Shown: positions 38,180-55,542 of the stretch, piece by piece
Numbering within the stretch: the first letter of the stretch is position 1
How the letters are laid out: each line of letters opens with the position of its first letter
IMG/VR virus record: IMGVR_UViG_3300046787_000408
Location: 124,001-188,000 of that record
DNA: 64,000 bases
Direction: 5' to 3' (one strand)
The notes under the pieces: generated by a model
Database searches by the model: none
What the model saw: the letters and a program-made list of their open reading frames with translations, nothing else
What the model was told of the DNA's origin: nothing
Translations under genes and position numbers: made by a program

Positions 38180-38358
38180 CTGAATCTAAATTAGATGGAC
38201 GCTCCTCTGTTGAGGTGGAGCTGGACCGTGAAGAATGGTATCAGCTCATGATGCTAGCACATGAACGTGATATCACCTTGAATCAACTAGTGGAACAAAT
38301 CTTGCGTGACTTTATCCAGGAGCATCACAATGGCACGTTGCCTGCACCTACCGTTTAA
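38176..38358 (+). CDS. Ribbon-helix-helix-like small protein
   Basis: VEVELDREEWYQLMMLAHERDITLNQLVEQIL pattern. Confidence 0.6.
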   Translation: MTESKLDGRSSVEVELDREEWYQLMMLAHERDITLNQLVEQILRDFIQEHHNGTLPAPTV

Positions 38359-38569
38359 GCAAAATAATCCACGCTCGGTACGTGGTGCAGTCAAACGGGG
38401 ATGGCATGTGGTTGAGGTCGACTTGCGTAAACGTGATGTCAGCTGGATGGCCTTGTGCTTGTGGGCCGAACGTGGCCTTGGTGGGTATTGGGTTGCTAGT
38501 CATTGGCTCAAACAGTTTGCATTTGAGTCCGGAGCAGACGCAGTGGCATTCAAACTAAAGTGGGCATGA
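38330..38569 (+). CDS. LRW-family small protein (isolated copy)
   Basis: LW..G...FAFESGADAVAFKLKWA*. Confidence 0.7.
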   Translation: MARCLHLPFKQNNPRSVRGAVKRGWHVVEVDLRKRDVSWMALCLWAERGLGGYWVASHWLKQFAFESGADAVAFKLKWA

Positions 38570-38570
38570 T

Positions 38571-39161
38571 ATGAAAAAGTTGATTTTTGCATTGTGTGCG
38601 ATTCCTTTGCTGGCCACAGCACAAGACTCTTGTCACCTAACCAGCCGAACTGACACACGAGCCACCACAGTGTTGAAACAAGTAGTGGTCCTAGAACAAA
38701 CTGTTACTCGCGAACAGTATGGCTGGCAACGGTGTCGTGCTAGAGTGCAAGCGCAGGCCGACAACACTGTGTATACCGGCGAAGGTAGTTTTAGTTGGGC
38801 CGATGGTAGAAGCATGGAAGAAAGTTGCGGCATGGCCCAACAACGAGCCAAAGATTCTATCCTGGAACAACTGGGCAGTCTGCAGATCAGCAGTAACAAG
38901 GCCATGGTGTGTAATGATGGCGTCATAGCCGAGCCCGGCACCCCTGTTGTCAAAACAAAATTTGCTGTGGGCTATGTGGGACAAAGACACGAATTTCCTG
39001 TGTACAATCATGGACGCAGAGCGTTCAGCCACAGTCGCCATCCGGGTAGCACTTGCCTACAGTTTATAAATCAAGTTGGTGCCATTGGCGGCACCATTTG
39101 CCAGACCAGCCAAAACCTTTGGGTAGTGGTTGACATCATTAACCCTTATCGTGTACAATAA
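38571..39161 (+). CDS. Secreted hypothetical protein
   Basis: Signal peptide MKKLIFALCAIPLLATA; several Cys. Confidence 0.7.
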   Translation: MKKLIFALCAIPLLATAQDSCHLTSRTDTRATTVLKQVVVLEQTVTREQYGWQRCRARVQAQADNTVYTGEGSFSWADGRSMEESCGMAQQRAKDSILEQLGSLQISSNKAMVCNDGVIAEPGTPVVKTKFAVGYVGQRHEFPVYNHGRRAFSHSRHPGSTCLQFINQVGAIGGTICQTSQNLWVVVDIINPYRVQ

Positions 39162-45385: not shown

Positions 45386-45463
45386 TTTGTGTTTTTCCTT
45401 CTCAGTATTTACCACTAGTGGTTTCTACTGATAAAAGTAGTACTCAAGTATTACAAAATTTCT

Positions 45464-45523
45464 GGTTGACTCAAATTGCCCAATTTGCTATAATATACAC
45501 ATAGCAAAGCAAAACAGGAGTTG
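45464..45523 (+). repeat. 60-bp promoter-leader-RBS cassette, copy 3
   Basis: TTGACT-17-TATAAT-ATACACATAGCAAAGCAAAACAGGAGTTG; preceded by GTAGTAC-TCAA-GTATTAC (45437-45454). Confidence 0.9.
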
Positions 45524-45896: not shown

Positions 45897-46099
45897 AACT
45901 GGTAATCAACCATTTATATTCTGAAAATGCAGACGGCCGCATCAAGTCTGTGCGTGGTGGACGCGATCTGCAAAAGGCTCGCACACTCGAGCGTCAAGGG
46001 TTTGCTCGTGTAAAACTAGTGAGCAACACATTTGCTGGCTACGGTGGTAGCCGTGATGTTGGTTACATTCTCAACAAATACGAAGTGACATTTCTATGA
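45893..46099 (+). CDS. Hypothetical protein
   Basis: AAGGA SD, ATGA-coupled. Confidence 0.65.
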   Translation: MKLVINHLYSENADGRIKSVRGGRDLQKARTLERQGFARVKLVSNTFAGYGGSRDVGYILNKYEVTFL

Positions 46100-46458
46100 A
46101 ATGGTTTGCTGAAACAACTGACTACAAAGACTCTGTGCCCAACGGTATCTACTTGCTGGATGACAGCAAGACCAAGATGTATGCATTCAAGCCCCGCGGC
46201 ACAGACGACATCAAAACGTTCAAAAACTTTATCCGCATTGACACCCGTGGTCGCAAGTTTGTTGTGAACCCGGTGCAGTTCGAAACCAAGGTCAAAGAAC
46301 CTGCACCCGAAGGTCGCTCATGGACAGTGAAAGGTAGCAAAGGCGATGAATACAAAATCACAGAGCACAGTGGAAATCTATCATGCACATGTTCCGGTTT
46401 CCGATTCCGTGGCGACTGTAAGCACGTCAAAGATCCCAGTATTCGTCAAGCGGTTTGA
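46096..46458 (+). CDS. SWIM zinc-finger protein
   Basis: VKGSKGDEY.I...SCTCSGFRFRGDCKH (CxC...CxH). Confidence 0.85.
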   Translation: MKWFAETTDYKDSVPNGIYLLDDSKTKMYAFKPRGTDDIKTFKNFIRIDTRGRKFVVNPVQFETKVKEPAPEGRSWTVKGSKGDEYKITEHSGNLSCTCSGFRFRGDCKHVKDPSIRQAV

Positions 46459-46474
46459 TGTCAACAGTGTAGAC

Positions 46475-46630
46475 ATGTTCCGGGATGGGCACTGGGCTGA
46501 AATGATTGAATGGTGTGAGAACAATCTCTATCACGGCGGCCACTACGAGCCCAACTGGCATGCACAGTATCCCAGCTTTTACTTTTGGGACGAAAAGGAA
46601 TATTCACTGTTCCTGTTGAGGTGGTCATGA
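46475..46630 (+). CDS. LRW-family protein, array member 1 (start uncertain, may be upstream)
   Basis: EWCENN...FYFWDEKEYSLFLLRWS*. Confidence 0.7.
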   Translation: MFRDGHWAEMIEWCENNLYHGGHYEPNWHAQYPSFYFWDEKEYSLFLLRWS

Positions 46631-46839
46631 CAGCAAGATACAGTCGCAGCCGAGATCTCCTCCATCGTGTGACAGTGCCGCATTCGGGCGGTTGGGTGTG
46701 GGGCAAGGATCAAAGGTTTGTGTGGTGCGAGCAAAACTGTCAAGACAATTACAGGGGTGCCATGTTTCGTCGGGATCAAACTGTGTGGCATTTTAAATCC
46801 CAACAGGATGCTGTGTTGTTTGCGCTGAAGTGGGGTTGA
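46627..46839 (+). CDS. LRW-family protein, array member 2
   Basis: WCEQNC...WHFKSQQDAVLFALKWG*. Confidence 0.75.
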   Translation: MTARYSRSRDLLHRVTVPHSGGWVWGKDQRFVWCEQNCQDNYRGAMFRRDQTVWHFKSQQDAVLFALKWG

Positions 46840-46841
46840 TC

Positions 46842-47087
46842 GTGAAGTTAAATGTAACCAAATTCCGCAGTGTTGATTATTACATCGTTGAAATAGACGA
46901 AGACCATCAGTCTGGCGATACATGGTATGAACGCAGTTTTCCAGATGTTGATTCCTGGTGCGAGCACACATTTGGCGAACAAGACTTGTGGGGAGAAACT
47001 CCTGTCACAGGTTGGAAGCGTATGCGTAATCAATATTTCTTTACAGAAGAAGGCAAACGCGATTGGTTTGTTATGAGGTGGTCATGA
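46842..47087 (+). CDS. LRW-family protein, array member 3
   Basis: WCEHTFG...YFFTEEGKRDWFVMRWS*; GTG start. Confidence 0.75.
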   Translation: MKLNVTKFRSVDYYIVEIDEDHQSGDTWYERSFPDVDSWCEHTFGEQDLWGETPVTGWKRMRNQYFFTEEGKRDWFVMRWS

Positions 47088-47314
47088 CAGACAACCGCTT
47101 GCATAATGTACCAGTGCGATTGAAAACAAGAAACTTGATATGGAATACAGAAGCCCGACTTATCGAACTCAACGAATTACGAGCATGGTTAGACGAAATT
47201 ACAGAGTGGCAACCGGACATGTATGAACTAAAGTTTCACAGTTCCGGACGTCAATGTGTTGCATGGTTTGCTGATGAACAGCATGCCGTGCTTTGTGCTT
47301 TGAGGTGGACATGA
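47084..47314 (+). CDS. LRW-family protein, array member 4
   Basis: WLDE...WFADEQHAVLCALRWT*. Confidence 0.75.
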   Translation: MTDNRLHNVPVRLKTRNLIWNTEARLIELNELRAWLDEITEWQPDMYELKFHSSGRQCVAWFADEQHAVLCALRWT

Positions 47315-47541
47315 GAGTAAATATTGAACCTTATTGGAAAAAGCTGGCCAATTGGTATTGGGAAAATGCTGGCGGCTACGAAGGTGTTGGCATGAGTATC
47401 TGGGACATGCTTGAACGTGATTACAGTGCTCGAAAAGTTTACCACGGTGAGCGTGGTGGCAAACTTGGCCTAAAGAAACAAATGATTGTTGAGTTCCCTA
47501 GCGAGCAAATGTATACCTTGTTTGCATTGAGGTGGTCATGA
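47311..47541 (+). CDS. LRW-family protein, array member 5
   Basis: VEFPSEQMYTLFALRWS*. Confidence 0.75.
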   Translation: MRVNIEPYWKKLANWYWENAGGYEGVGMSIWDMLERDYSARKVYHGERGGKLGLKKQMIVEFPSEQMYTLFALRWS

Positions 47542-47855
47542 TCACAAGCATTTGGAGACACGAAGATGACGTTTGCCCCAGAGTCAGCGGGCATTACCTG
47601 GCCTATAAATTGCCATCCCTGGGTGATGACGAAGAGGGCTATGGATTGTATTACTGGGACAACTATTATACAGAATGGCGAGAGACCCAGGCTCCGCACT
47701 CTCACTCTATCCGAGTCAGCATCTGGACTCCTTGCCCCGACCATGATCCGGGTACCCATATTTCACGACAACCAGTGCAGGCAGAAATTGAAGCCTGGCG
47801 CAATGTGTGCAATGCAATTGACCAATACAACTTGATCACAAAGTTAACACAATGA
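47538..47855 (+). CDS. Hypothetical protein (DUF551-like pattern) within the array
   Basis: W...CP..SGHYL...YYW...W...IWTPCP. Confidence 0.6.
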   Translation: MITSIWRHEDDVCPRVSGHYLAYKLPSLGDDEEGYGLYYWDNYYTEWRETQAPHSHSIRVSIWTPCPDHDPGTHISRQPVQAEIEAWRNVCNAIDQYNLITKLTQ

Positions 47856-48280
47856 ACATTATCAAAGATGTAACTGAAGGCATAGAACCTTTCCCGTTCC
47901 TTTCGTACCAACAAGCACTCTGGGACCGACTGAATCAAGGTGGATTCAAACAGGGTCAAATATCTTTGTATGCTTCGGGTCGGCGGACTGGCAAGAGTCT
48001 CTATCAGAAAATGGTGCTCAACAAATTGTATGGTACTAACCTTTGCAAAGAAATTGTATTACCCATGAAGCCAGAACCCAAGTACAAGTTCAGTCGTGCC
48101 AAGTGGTATGAAGCAAAACTACCCGGTGACGGACAGGCAGTATTTGCTTGGTGTACTGAACAATTTGGTCCCGAGCCATACTACCCCGATGCTTGGTCAC
48201 GCTGGTACTTTAACGTGAATAGAACATTTAGATTCCGTGATGCCAAAGACTACGAATGGTTCCTGTTGAGGTGGGCATGA
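47852..48280 (+). CDS. LRW-family protein fused to an N-terminal P-loop remnant, array member 6
   Basis: GGFKQGQISLYASGRRTGKS, then WCTEQFG...FRFRDAKDYEWFLLRWA*. Confidence 0.72.
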   Translation: MNIIKDVTEGIEPFPFLSYQQALWDRLNQGGFKQGQISLYASGRRTGKSLYQKMVLNKLYGTNLCKEIVLPMKPEPKYKFSRAKWYEAKLPGDGQAVFAWCTEQFGPEPYYPDAWSRWYFNVNRTFRFRDAKDYEWFLLRWA

Positions 48281-48477
48281 CAGTAACACTACCCTATGAT
48301 CCTGATTGGAAAGCTTTGGCATGGGCTAAAGAATATTGTTCAAGTTATATCACCAACAAGGCCAGTAATACCACAAGACTAAAGCCGGTGTCTGGTGGTT
48401 GGGTTAATGATTCTAGCATTGTTTATTATTTTAGTGATGAACAAGATGCTGTAATGTTTGCATTAAGGTGGTTATGA
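48277..48477 (+). CDS. LRW-family protein, array member 7
   Basis: WAKEYC...YYFSDEQDAVMFALRWL*. Confidence 0.75.
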   Translation: MTVTLPYDPDWKALAWAKEYCSSYITNKASNTTRLKPVSGGWVNDSSIVYYFSDEQDAVMFALRWL

Positions 48478-48713
48478 CCGAAACTCAGCAACAATACAGT
48501 CATTTGGATTATGAAGTCATGCTTCAGAAGGACCAGTGTCGTAAAGTCATGCGATGGTGCGAAGAACAACACGGTCCACGATGGGAAGCTATAGGCAATA
48601 GATCTGGTGTATGGACGGTATTTTGGGCAGGCAGAGGACACACTGATCAGTATAGATTCTGTTTTGCACATGAAAAAGATATGATGATGTTTGTATTAAG
48701 GTGGTCAAAATGA
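48474..48713 (+). CDS. LRW-family protein, array member 8
   Basis: WCEEQHG...FCFAHEKDMMMFVLRWSK*. Confidence 0.75.
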   Translation: MTETQQQYSHLDYEVMLQKDQCRKVMRWCEEQHGPRWEAIGNRSGVWTVFWAGRGHTDQYRFCFAHEKDMMMFVLRWSK

Positions 48714-48943
48714 ATTCTAAACAACGACGAGCAGATCGCAAAGAGTGGCGCTATGAGGTCACCATCAACGATTCACAATCCTTTGTGAATTATGACGCTA
48801 TGTTTGATTGGTGTGTTGCCAACTACGGCAACACTCGCGGTATCAGTCCCAACGGTTGGCGTGAAAAACATGGGCATTTTGGCACTTGTTGGCAGTTCAA
48901 CGATTCACGTAAGGCCATGGCATTTGCACTAAAGTGGAAATGA
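48710..48943 (+). CDS. LRW-family protein, array member 9
   Basis: WCVANYG...WQFNDSRKAMAFALKWK*. Confidence 0.75.
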   Translation: MNSKQRRADRKEWRYEVTINDSQSFVNYDAMFDWCVANYGNTRGISPNGWREKHGHFGTCWQFNDSRKAMAFALKWK

Positions 48944-48959
48944 ATTTTATAAGTACTTT

Positions 48960-49631
48960 ATGAAATTTAACTCTCAAGTTATCCCTGACTTTTTAAGTGA
49001 ACAAGAAATTGCCTTGATTGAACAAGTGGTCGAAGCCAATCGAACAGAGTCTGACACTTACCGCGACATCAATCCAGTCTCAGGCCACAGTGCTGTGACA
49101 CACAGCATTCACCTAAACCATCCGTCTTATCGTGCTGTGGCTAACATTTTGGTACCCCGGTTTCAGCAACAGTTTGGTCCGGATATTAGTCTAGACAATG
49201 CACACATTTTGGATGCCTATGTTCCTTATGGTATCCACACTGATGTCATGAGTGCTGGATTTGATCCCAATGGCACCAAAGATGCTGCTTGGACCTTTAT
49301 CATTCCCTTGGACAATTATGATTCTAGTACCTTGGTATTTTCACAGCAACACGATACCATCAAGACCCTAGATCGCTGGATCGCTGAAACTGGGGCAGTA
49401 CCACATGGCATTGATGATGATTTGCATCAACAGTATTTGACACACGTGGATCGATTGGATTTACGGTACTTGGATGTGGAAGATATTTTTCCTTGGCGCA
49501 AGGGCAGTTTGTTTGCTGCATCTAGGCGAAAGTTTCACACCAGCGATAATTTCCCAGCCAAAGGAGTCAAATGCAAACGAGCTATTGTTATTTGGTCAAC
49601 TGTACCAAAGCAATATAATCAAAACACTTGA
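48960..49631 (+). CDS. 2OG-Fe(II) oxygenase-like protein
   Basis: YGIHTD (HxD), WTFIIPL, FHTSD; TAAGTA 4 nt upstream. Confidence 0.55.
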   Translation: MKFNSQVIPDFLSEQEIALIEQVVEANRTESDTYRDINPVSGHSAVTHSIHLNHPSYRAVANILVPRFQQQFGPDISLDNAHILDAYVPYGIHTDVMSAGFDPNGTKDAAWTFIIPLDNYDSSTLVFSQQHDTIKTLDRWIAETGAVPHGIDDDLHQQYLTHVDRLDLRYLDVEDIFPWRKGSLFAASRRKFHTSDNFPAKGVKCKRAIVIWSTVPKQYNQNT

Positions 49632-55302: not shown

Positions 55303-55311
55303 CTAACAATA

Positions 55312-55542
55312 ATGCTGGCCACTGCACTCCCGGATCGTGAAAAAAACAGCTTTGCTCACAGCAAAGAAATTACCAAACCTTTTGGCAGTTTAGACAACAT
55401 AATTTGCTGGTGCAAAACTGAACTCTTAGATGAATGGCGTTGGGAACTGATTGAAGTTAGCACAGATCAACGACCCGGACGATACGTGTTTTATTTTGAT
55501 AGCGAACGAGATCTGTTTGCTTTTGTATTACATTGGTCATGA
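55312..55542 (+). CDS. LRW-family protein
   Basis: WCKTEL..EWRW...FYFDSERDLFAFVLHWS*. Confidence 0.72.
   Translation: MLATALPDREKNSFAHSKEITKPFGSLDNIICWCKTELLDEWRWELIEVSTDQRPGRYVFYFDSERDLFAFVLHWS

What the first reader, a model, noticed from the sequence alone, without database searches (positions are those of the whole stretch)
46475..48943. Self-stacking gene array: the conserved C-terminal LRW[S/T/A]-stop codons are the next gene's Shine-Dalgarno and start
Seen: nine highly diverged ~50-140-aa paralogues in tandem share W(C)xxxxG...[FY]xFxxExDxxxFxL[RK]W. At five junctions the DNA reads (T/A)TG AGG TGG NCA TGA (46617-46630, 47073-47087, 47300-47314, 47527-47541, 48266-48280). Two more read TTA AGG TGG (48463-48477, 48696-48713). 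Arg is coded by AGG at all seven, giving GAGGTG/AAGGTG, complementary to the 16S 3' end, just before an ATGA stop/start overlap. Terminal or isolated copies use AAG TGG or CAT TGG instead (48943, 38569, 55542). Inference: each gene carries the translation-coupling signal for whatever follows it, making a plug-in array that can grow by recombination at the shared ends. The diverged bodies would suit a bank of anti-defence or host-takeover adaptors on one fold.
Basis: partly seen in the sequence, partly recalled or inferred. Interest (0 to 1): 0.75.

Follow-up and report, generated by a model that had tools for sequence, protein, structure and literature searches.

The report
Phage gene cassettes with built-in ribosome-binding tails
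A jumbo phage from fresh water carries a row of small related genes whose last conserved codons (Arg-Trp, always written AGG TGG) double as the ribosome-binding site and overlapping start of the next gene, so cassettes can be stacked, lost or swapped at these shared ends; the translation trick is known, its use as a family-wide plug is new, and the proteins' function is unknown.

Summary
Window 46346-48943 carries nine homologous small genes and one unrelated passenger (g6). Seven junctions read [G/A]AGGTGG, one or two codons, then ATGA. The 12-mer AGGTGGNNATGA occurs 6 times, against 0.16 expected. AGG makes up 4.7% of the genome's Arg codons and 3.7% of internal Arg codons in this family. 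At the tail it accounts for 113 of 131 Arg codons, across 185 non-redundant tails from about 40 related metagenomic loci.

Tails followed by an overlapping start are mostly Arg-AGG (108 of 153). Tails with no coupled gene are mostly Lys (21 of 32) and hold most of the CGN codons. Predicted anti-SD pairing is about -11.6 kcal/mol at family junctions, against -4.0 at 79 other ATGA junctions in the genome.

Between two conserved anchor genes, the cassette number ranges from 0 to more than 25. Breakpoints fall inside the shared tail.

Best reading: a Shine-Dalgarno site embedded in the tail drives reinitiation or initiation on the next gene, and its microhomology allows cassette shuffling.

Caveats: there is no RNA or translation data, the phylogenetically controlled test is underpowered, and three terminal copies keep AGG.

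The family has 892 clusters, no Pfam or PHROG match, and a beta-alpha-beta-beta-alpha fold. Its function is unknown. Some members carry N-terminal pieces of capsid, RNR and possibly terminase motifs.

The parts
45455..45516 (+). Repeated early-type promoter cassette: TTGACT, 17 nt, TG-n-TATAAT, then a conserved leader ending in CAGGAG. It heads the transcription unit that holds the array.
   Evidence: Promoter scan scores 11/12 with an extended -10. There are 14 copies in the genome, all on the + strand. Depth pile-up and loose ends mark it in four metagenomes.
46096..46458 (+). u3, the conserved upstream anchor gene (120 aa, SWIM-like zinc-finger motif).
   Evidence: 73-91% identical orthologues lie directly upstream of the array in most related loci. 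Pfam SWIM E 0.004, below the cut-off.
46346..46630 (+). g1, family member. Tail TTG AGG TGG TCA TGA.
46627..46839 (+). g2, family member with a Lys tail (CTG AAG TGG GGT TGA). Still coupled, through a TTG 46836 or GTG 46842 start.
46836..47087 (+). g3, family member. Tail ATG AGG TGG TCA TGA.
47084..47314 (+). g4, a diverged family member. Tail TTG AGG TGG ACA TGA.
   Evidence: 22.5 bits against the independent HMM.
47311..47541 (+). g5, a diverged family member. Tail TTG AGG TGG TCA TGA. Its tail serves the non-family gene g6.
   Evidence: AF2 model has pLDDT 82 and the same topology plus one inserted helix.
47538..47855 (+). g6, an unrelated passenger gene (105 aa). Its end, ACA CAA TGA, has no SD-like tail.
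   Evidence: 0.2 bits against the family HMM. Junction pairing is -5.8 kcal/mol. Orthologues occur in L019, L011 and L032.
47852..48280 (+). g7, a 142-aa member. Its N-terminal extension has a terminase Walker-A-like piece and an RNR catalytic-loop-like piece, followed by the family domain. Tail TTG AGG TGG GCA TGA.
   Evidence: AF2 residues 80-142 have pLDDT 89-97. Residues 57-73 against the phage's own NrdA 438-454 give E 0.001. hhalign against its own TerL Walker A gives E 0.003, probability 11%.
48277..48477 (+). g8, family member. Tail TTA AGG TGG TTA TGA.
48474..48713 (+). g9, family member. Tail TTA AGG TGG TCA AAA TGA.
48710..48943 (+). g10, the conserved terminal member and downstream anchor. 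Tail CTA AAG TGG AAA TGA. The next ATG is 17 nt away, with no overlap.
38291..38569 (+). Isolated family member. Tail CTA AAG TGG GCA TGA. The next gene's ATG is at 38571.
55303..55542 (+). Isolated family member. Tail TTA CAT TGG TCA TGA (His instead of Arg/Lys).
48960..49631 (+). d1, a 223-aa gene that follows the array in the closest relatives. Function not identified.
   Evidence: No Pfam or NCBIfam hit.

Best explanation
The array is a set of homologous small early-gene cassettes. Each encodes a roughly 65-residue beta-alpha-beta-beta-alpha domain that ends the protein. The final helix ends in L-R-W. The protein accepts R, K, H, Q or V at the middle position, but the DNA is held at [G]AGG TGG, followed by one or two codons ending in A and then TGA.

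On the mRNA, GAGGUG(G) pairs with the 3' end of 16S rRNA 5-8 nt upstream of an AUG that overlaps the stop (AUGA). The proposed mechanism is that a ribosome finishing one cassette is held by this pairing and restarts on the next gene, or a fresh 30S subunit is recruited there. Translation would then not fade along a string of 10-30 short genes. Any gene placed behind a family tail is served, as the unrelated g6 is.

Because every cassette ends with the same 9-15 nt, recombination between tails deletes, duplicates, reorders or imports whole cassettes while keeping both reading frames and the coupling signal.

Shown here: the sequence pattern, its codon statistics, its association with an overlapping downstream start, the cassette-level variation, and breakpoints in the tails. 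Inferred: ribosome pairing, reinitiation, early transcription from the upstream sigma70-type promoter cassette, and the recombination mechanism.
For: - Codon bias at the tail. AGG is 4.7% of Arg codons in 235 long ORFs and 12 of 325 internal Arg codons of family genes. At the tail it is 113 of 131 Arg codons.
- The preceding codon. In the first 141 tails (82 AGG tails), the codon before AGG ends in G in 77 and never in C or T; before Lys tails it ends in G in only 59%. Members with W replaced by F keep TTG AGG in 3 of 4 distinct tail sequences.
- Link to coupling. Coupled tails (n=153): AGG 108, AGA 11, CGG 2, Lys 28. Uncoupled tails (n=32): Lys 21, AGG 5, AGA 1, CGN 4, Gln 1. Fisher tests give R vs non-R p=3e-7, AGG vs other Arg p=0.005, AGR vs CGN p=2.5e-4. 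The trend persists when counted per orthogroup, with 45 groups.
- Pairing strength. Median anti-SD pairing is -11.6 kcal/mol at the 7 family junctions and -4.0 at 79 other ATGA junctions of the same genome (p=1.4e-5). Only one other junction reaches -9.5.
- The phage uses SD sites generally. 28 of 47 plus-strand AAGGAG copies are followed by ATG within 12 nt.
- Overlap geometry. 129 of 153 coupled tails are exact ATGA overlaps.
- Generality. The pattern recurs in other lineages, L070-L075.
- Cassette flux. Between anchors u3 and g10 there are 0 to more than 25 cassettes, with order changes.
- Breakpoints. L007 joins the g1 body to the g9/g10-type junction. Alignment breakpoints against L019 start 15-37 nt inside tails. 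A metagenomic joint 48268->48699 has 6 letters fitting both sides.
- Published background. Intragenic SD motifs upstream of overlapping starts are common and often raise termination-reinitiation (PMC6728339). The 3' ends of genes are known to carry codon constraints from the next gene's RBS (PMC8410138).
Against: - No transcript, ribosome-profiling or reporter data exist, and no RNA run holds the region.
- Most other ATGA junctions in this genome, including g6->g7 inside the array, have no strong SD. So strong pairing is not needed for coupling here.
- 28 coupled tails use Lys (AAG or AAA). Lys codon choice does not differ between coupled and uncoupled tails.
- Three terminal g10 orthologues (L004, L025-28, L034) keep AGG directly in front of a terminator. 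L031 is coupled with Lys.
- On the g10 tree only 3-4 independent contrasts exist, giving a sign-test p of about 0.5.
- Uncoupled tails come largely from a few orthogroups, so the pooled Fisher tests overstate independence.
- In a lower-GC lineage, AGA is common at coupled tails.
- The host, and so its exact 16S tail, is unknown.
Confidence: 0.7

Rival explanations
1. The shared junction is kept uniform by recombination itself, through gene conversion or unequal crossing-over between tails (concerted evolution). On this view AGGTGG is a recombination joint, or even a hotspot, and its likeness to an SD is incidental.
For: Breakpoints of cassette gains and losses fall in the tail. TTG is used more often than CTG before AGG than codon usage predicts, 58 against 10. 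Terminal copies with no gene to serve can still carry AGG. GGTGG resembles the 3' half of the E. coli Chi octamer (own knowledge, not tested).
Against: Identity between paralogous tails stops after about 9 nt. The codons just upstream differ at the amino-acid level (FALRW, FLLRW, FVMRW), so conversion tracts would have to be implausibly short. The conserved letters are exactly those that pair with the anti-SD, at the right distance from the AUG. CGN and Lys accumulate where no gene follows. No longer homogenised tracts were seen between neighbouring cassettes.
Confidence: 0.12
2. This is protein-level constraint plus mutational proximity only. The site toggles between Lys (AAG) and Arg (AGG) by single transitions, so Arg is AGG by descent, with no selection on the RNA.
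For: K and R alternate within orthogroups. AAG is over-used at Lys tails, 28 of 49 against 35% internally, as expected if Lys tails derive from AGG or the reverse. All Arg tails in the g10 orthogroup are AGG, whether coupled or not.
Against: Arg is the majority state across 892 clusters; 111 of the 147 listed representatives end in RW. The paralogues are about 20% identical, so synonymous sites should be saturated. AGG to AGA or CGG is a single synonymous step, yet these are rare at coupled tails (13 of 121) and common at uncoupled ones (5 of 10). This rival also does not explain the G required at the preceding third position.
Confidence: 0.06
3. The motif serves another nucleic-acid function. 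Candidates are a ribosome pause by a rare codon before termination, an RNase or regulator site on early mRNA, or a programmed frameshift signal that fuses neighbouring cassettes.
For: AGG is rare, and the phage carries its own tRNA-Arg(CCT). SD-like sequences close to a stop can promote frameshifting in prfB (own knowledge).
Against: There is no slippery sequence at NCA TGA. The G of the preceding codon and the TGG are not explained by rare-codon pausing. The motif is GAGG, not GGAG, the T4 RegB site (own knowledge). The predicted local structure is not unusual: unpaired probability of the SD is 0.01-0.68, against a mean of 0.51 at other junctions.
Confidence: 0.04

Closest known systems
Translational coupling by termination-reinitiation at ATGA/TGATG overlaps, with an intragenic Shine-Dalgarno motif (Huber et al. 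2019, PMC6728339; review PMC12548453; codon constraint at gene 3' ends, PMC8410138)
   Same: The genes are co-directional with a 4-nt stop/start overlap. An SD lies in the last codons of the upstream gene, 5-8 nt before the start. Synonymous codon choice at the gene end is bent by the next gene's RBS.
   Different: Here the SD is not an accident of one gene pair. It sits in the conserved terminal residues of a whole protein family (892 clusters) and travels with each cassette. It is far stronger than at the genome's other overlaps, and it repeats 7 to more than 25 times in a row. Function has not been measured.
PeSL (promoter-early stem-loop) cassettes that mediate modular shuffling in hyperplastic regions of T4-type phages (Arbiol et al. 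2010, PMC2839356; Comeau et al. 2014, PMC4122927)
   Same: A short conserved expression signal is repeated between small non-essential early genes. It doubles as the homology for gain, loss and exchange of ORFs, and gene content differs between close relatives. This genome also has 14 copies of a PeSL-like promoter cassette, one of which heads the array's operon.
   Different: PeSLs are intergenic transcription signals of about 50 bp. The element here is 9-15 nt, lies inside coding sequence, acts (if at all) on translation, and belongs to one protein family. No mini-circles or recombination intermediates were looked for.
Integron gene-cassette arrays
   Same: Promoterless cassettes are stacked behind one promoter. 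Cassette number and order vary. Downstream cassettes depend on signals supplied from upstream.
   Different: There is no room for attC sites, because the genes overlap by 4 nt. No integrase was examined. The cassettes are paralogues of one family. Exchange is presumably by homologous or microhomology recombination, not site-specific recombination.
Polymorphic internal-protein (IP) locus of T-even phages, with a shared capsid-targeting leader (own knowledge; not checked in the library)
   Same: It is a hypervariable run of small phage genes that share one short terminal coding motif, while the bodies differ.
   Different: There the shared motif is N-terminal and has a known protein function, capsid targeting and protease cleavage. 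Here it is C-terminal and appears to be constrained at the RNA level.

Membership tests
SD-assisted termination-reinitiation coupling | [quoted passage not shown] | tested here: met
   Seven ATGA overlaps behind family tails in the window, plus a TTGA/GTG junction after g2 and an ATGA after the non-family g6. 129 of 153 coupled family tails elsewhere are ATGA overlaps.
SD-assisted termination-reinitiation coupling | A motif complementary to the 16S 3' end inside the upstream gene, about 5-10 nt before the start | tested here: met
   GAGGTG sits at -9 to -4. Duplex energy with a generic anti-SD tail is -8.6 to -12.8 kcal/mol, against a median of -4.0 at other junctions. The host 16S is unknown.
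SD-assisted termination-reinitiation coupling | Both genes lie on one transcript | tested here: inconclusive
   A strong promoter-like cassette lies at 45455-45516, and no good promoter or terminator match lies inside the array. No RNA run holds the region.
SD-assisted termination-reinitiation coupling | Translation of the downstream gene depends on translation of the upstream gene and on the SD | not testable with these tools
   This needs reporter constructs or ribosome profiling.
PeSL-type regulatory cassettes | An intergenic sigma70-like promoter joined to a stem-loop terminator between the shuffled ORFs | tested here: not met
   Array junctions have no intergenic DNA. The PeSL-like cassette occurs only at the head of the operon and at 13 other places.
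Integron cassette array | attC recombination sites at cassette boundaries and an adjacent integrase | tested here: not met
   Cassette boundaries are 4-nt gene overlaps with no imperfect inverted repeat between genes. The integrase was not searched for.
Any curated protein family (Pfam, PHROGs, NCBIfam) | A score above the family threshold | tested here: not met
   No hit for the domain in Pfam, PHROGs or NCBIfam, either for the window genes or for ten consensus-like representatives. No tblastn hit in 50,697 GenBank phages.
KH-like / ferredoxin-like alpha-beta plait folds | A structural match well above background | tested here: not met
   Foldseek against PDB gives E of about 1 or worse. VIA-align best Z is 5.0 for g7 and 3.7 for g5, within the noise range the tool states.

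The most novel reading that the evidence does not exclude
The family is a 'bait-display' bank. A constant C-terminal LRW domain would be fused, in many members, to short copies of the most conserved motifs of core phage proteins. The capsid Gp23 segment around GVQPM is robustly detected; the RNR catalytic loop NLCxEI and the terminase Walker-A stretch are weaker. These early proteins would act as decoys or blockers for host defences that sense short motifs of core phage proteins, or as poisons of competing phages. The SD-in-tail design would let such cassettes be stacked and exchanged freely between jumbo phages.
Probability: 0.1. Interest if true: 0.9.

Novelty: new variant of a known kind. 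Interest (0 to 1): 0.6.

Why it matters
It shows a protein family whose conserved end is written under two codes at once: a helix-capping Arg-Trp and a ribosome-binding site. This turns each gene into a self-contained, stackable expression module.

That gives a concrete, testable answer to two questions. One is how long strings of tiny phage genes stay translated. The other is how hyperplastic regions of large phages gain and lose genes without breaking expression.

It also defines a large, unannotated family: 892 clusters at 50% identity, with arrays of more than 25 copies in 300-370 kb freshwater phages. This family is an obvious candidate for early host-takeover or counter-defence functions. 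Its mosaic N-termini, built from capsid, RNR and possibly terminase motifs, are unexplained.

For annotation, the tail motif is a reliable marker of gene ends and starts in these genomes.

Tried and rejected
- Family and similarity searches. Pfam, PHROGs and NCBIfam gave nothing for the domain. blastn of the region and tblastn of two members against 50,697 phage records gave no match.
- First locus search. The search for related loci with the nine-paralogue alignment failed because it had no conserved stretch. It was replaced by the g10 orthologue alignment.
- Fold searches. Two AF2 models were searched against PDB (Foldseek and VIA-align), BFVD and AFDB clusters. Only uncharacterised phage proteins and weak KH/RRM-like plaits came back.
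- RNA evidence. Only DNA runs hold the region.
- Independent-pairs test on the g10 tree. It has too few contrasts to decide.
- SD masking. The idea that the SD is hidden in a local hairpin to enforce strict coupling was checked. Unpaired probabilities are unremarkable.
- Frameshift fusion, a RegB-type site and a Chi-like hotspot were considered and set aside from the sequence alone.
- Terminase likeness of g7's N-terminus. BLASTP gives E 1.2 and hhalign gives E 0.003 with probability 11%. It is kept only as a lead.
Full report
**Context**

The window is bases 124001-188000 of a single 299,983-bp virus contig. CheckV estimates it as 81% complete. It encodes a T4-type terminase. The nearest matches, at about 54% identity, are jumbo myoviruses such as Pseudomonas PA5oct and Agrobacterium Atu_ph07. 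It also encodes a Gp23-type capsid protein, RNR and 38 tRNAs. DNA runs that hold the region are freshwater metagenomes. The region has no nucleotide match among 50,697 GenBank phage records.

**Anatomy**

Reading the sequence gives ten head-to-tail + strand genes between 46346 and 48943. Nine are homologous. With an HMM built from 58 outside proteins that are not close to any window protein, they score 22-56 bits. The tenth, g6 (47538-47855), scores 0.2 bits.

AF2 models of g7 and of the most diverged member, g5, agree on the fold.
- In g7, the C-terminal residues 80-142 have pLDDT 89-97.
- In g5, mean pLDDT is 82 and pTM 0.68.
- Both show a beta-alpha-beta-beta-alpha domain that ends the protein. 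g5 has one inserted helix.

So the 'common fold' condition is met. No solved or curated relative was found.

A profile search of 1.84 billion representatives found 892 clusters at E<=0.001. The domain is always C-terminal. Of the 147 listed representatives, 111 end in RW and 24 in KW, mostly followed by a single residue. All named sources are metagenomic 'hypothetical proteins'.

The first paralogue probably starts at ATG 46346, not 46475. That start and open frame are conserved in all nine orthologues, several of which lack any later start codon, and the first beta-strand lies upstream of 46475.

**Is the junction more than chance?**

AGGTGGNNATGA occurs six times in the window, all inside the array. 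Shuffles gave 0.16.

AGG is 4.7% of Arg codons in the genome's long ORFs. It is 3.7% (12 of 325) of internal Arg codons of family genes in this and related phages. All seven Arg tails in the window use AGG.

I collected related loci through several routes:
- g10 orthologues;
- whole related virus records;
- three unrelated representatives.

This gave 185 non-redundant family tails. Of 131 Arg tails, 113 are AGG.

In the first 141 tails (82 AGG tails), the codon before AGG ends in G in 77 of them and never in C or T. Before Lys tails, it ends in G in only 59%. The conserved DNA is therefore TGAGGTGG, then a codon ending in A, then TGA. The amino acids just upstream vary. Variants with Phe instead of Trp keep TTG AGG in three of four distinct tail sequences.

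**Does it track coupling?**

I called a tail 'coupled' if a start codon of an ORF of 40 or more codons overlaps or abuts the stop.

| Tail class | n | AGG | AGA | CGN | Lys | Other |
|---|---|---|---|---|---|---|
| Coupled | 153 | 108 | 11 | 2 | 28 | 4 |
| Uncoupled | 32 | 5 | 1 | 4 | 21 | 1 |

Fisher tests give R vs non-R p=3e-7, AGG vs other Arg p=0.005, and AGR vs CGN p=2.5e-4. Counting by orthogroup (45 groups) keeps the direction.

The data are not independent, though. Many uncoupled tails are orthologues of the terminal gene g10. Within that orthogroup:
- five of six coupled lineages have Arg-AGG, and about ten uncoupled ones have Lys;
- three uncoupled lineages keep AGG in front of a terminator, and one coupled lineage has Lys;
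- only 3-4 independent contrasts exist on the tree, so the sign test cannot decide.

Lys codon choice (AAG or AAA) does not differ with coupling.

**Strength and setting of the signal**

Predicted pairing with a generic 16S tail has a median of -11.6 kcal/mol at the seven family junctions. At 79 other ATGA junctions of the same genome it is -4.0 (p=1.4e-5), and at non-junction ATGA sites -3.0.

The phage does use SD sites in general. 28 of 47 plus-strand AAGGAG copies precede an ATG within 12 nt, against 6 of 17 on the other strand.

GAGG ends 5 nt before the AUG with a one-residue tail and 8 nt with a two-residue tail. Both fall in the usual working range.

A strong SD is not required for overlap coupling in this genome. 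The non-family gene g6 ends without one, yet g7 follows by ATGA. The plausible benefit is specific to long strings of short genes, where imperfect reinitiation would otherwise compound. This last point is inference.

Published work shows that SD motifs upstream of overlapping starts are common and that removing them often lowers reinitiation by 50-90% (PMC6728339). It also shows that gene 3' ends carry codon constraints from the next gene's RBS (PMC8410138).

**Cassette behaviour**

The array lies between two conserved anchors: the SWIM-like gene u3 (46096-46458) and g10. In related phages the number of genes between these anchors varies:
- 0 in L012 and L029;
- 1 in L007, L022 and L031;
- 2-7 in L001, L004, L015 and L019;
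- 9 in this window;
- more than 25 in a complete 374-kb phage (L065) and in L066.

Order also changes: in L020, g7 comes before g2.

Against L019, whose shared genes are 62-94% identical, there are four whole-gene differences. Each DNA alignment block begins 15-37 nt inside the preceding tail. L007 joins a g1-type body to the g9/g10-type junction, with the switch inside AGGTGGTCA. L019 joins g7 to g10 in the same way.

Contigs from other freshwater runs show a joint 48268->48699 in which six letters (AGGTGG) fit both sides. In the source sample itself there is a joint from g2's tail to g3's tail. Two shorter-sided joints are ambiguous.

These data fit recombination at the shared tail. They do not show the enzymology.

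**Transcription**

A near-consensus sigma70-type promoter lies at 45466-45494 (TTGACT, 17 nt, TG-n-TATAAT). It belongs to a roughly 60-bp cassette with a conserved leader and SD. The cassette occurs 14 times in the genome, always on the + strand, and some copies sit behind a stem-loop. It also shows a 20-fold depth pile-up in metagenomes.

This resembles the PeSL cassettes of T4-type phages (PMC2839356). It suggests that the array is part of an early unit read by host polymerase. That is inference; no RNA data exist.

**Function**

Function is unknown.

One unexpected lead emerged. Long family members (100-156 aa) have N-terminal extensions containing short pieces of conserved core-protein motifs.
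- Eleven of 89 scanned members match the N-terminal part of Pfam Gp23 at E<=0.01. The best is P0042, residues 14-65, at 45 bits, above the cut-off.
- Twelve representatives hit residues 36-100 of this phage's own capsid protein, one hits its NrdA catalytic loop, and reversed controls gave no hits at all.
- The window's g7 carries an NrdA-loop-like piece. Residues 57-73 against NrdA 438-454 give E 0.001, with 33 of 51 nt identical.
- g7 also carries a Walker-A stretch that aligns to the phage's own terminase Walker A only weakly.

Pieces occur in different combinations. Their meaning is open. Candidates are decoys for motif-sensing defences, relics of recombination at the only segments conserved between distant phages, and relics of mobile-element target sites.

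**Verdict**

The translation-signal reading is the best explanation, at about 0.7. It is a new, family-wide variant of a known mechanism. The plug-in and recombination reading has good comparative support. The proposed biological role is untested.

Noticed in passing
window 47852-48079 (g7 N-terminus); proteins P0042, P0050, P0057, P0065, P0112, P0127 and others; L070:1402-1833: Long family members carry N-terminal extensions made of short pieces of conserved core-protein motifs. The capsid Gp23 segment around GVQPM scores above the Pfam cut-off. The RNR catalytic loop NLCxEIxLP and the terminase Walker-A stretch are weaker. The pieces occur in varying combinations ahead of a KYKFSRAKWY linker and the family domain. 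Reversed-sequence controls gave no hits.
   Followed up: partly
window 45455-45516; other copies at window 16841, 17083, 18438, 36576, 36906, 37515, 62366, 63287, and elsewhere in the genome: A roughly 60-bp promoter cassette has 14 copies, all on the + strand. It comprises a near-consensus sigma70 -35 and extended -10, a conserved leader and an SD. Some copies follow a GC stem-loop. It resembles T4-type PeSL elements and shows a 20-fold depth pile-up in metagenomes.
   Followed up: partly
window 46346-46458: g1 appears to start at a conserved ATG inside the 3' end of the SWIM-like gene u3. That gives a 113-nt out-of-frame overlap, kept open in all nine orthologous loci examined.
   Followed up: partly
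G000:C1:296816-296890 (outside the window): The phage encodes 38 tRNAs in one cluster. One is tRNA-Arg(CCT), which reads AGG, the rare codon fixed in the family tails.
   Followed up: no
family tails in all loci (for example window 46834-46839 and 48929-48943): Lys tails over-use AAG: 28 of 49, against 35% of internal Lys codons. This holds whether or not a gene follows, which fits frequent AGG<->AAG switching at this site.
   Followed up: partly
window 46621-46629, 47078-47086, 47532-47540, 48468-48476: The GTG inside AGG TGG is in frame with the downstream ATG, two codons upstream. Mechanical ORF callers therefore extend each downstream gene by 'MV'. No SD precedes that GTG, so ATG is the likelier start.
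   Followed up: no
L065 (G001:C1:156000-169500) and L066 (G002:C1:68000-81600): Related phages hold arrays of about 25-30 family cassettes. One 88-kb fragment has two separate arrays, and a complete 374-kb phage has 28 or more members.
   Followed up: partly
L001:10229-10260, L004:10220-10250, L012, L020, L024, L025, L034: In many relatives the terminal gene g10 is followed at once by a conserved GC-rich hairpin with a T-run (an intrinsic terminator). In this window it is followed by a further gene, d1.
   Followed up: no
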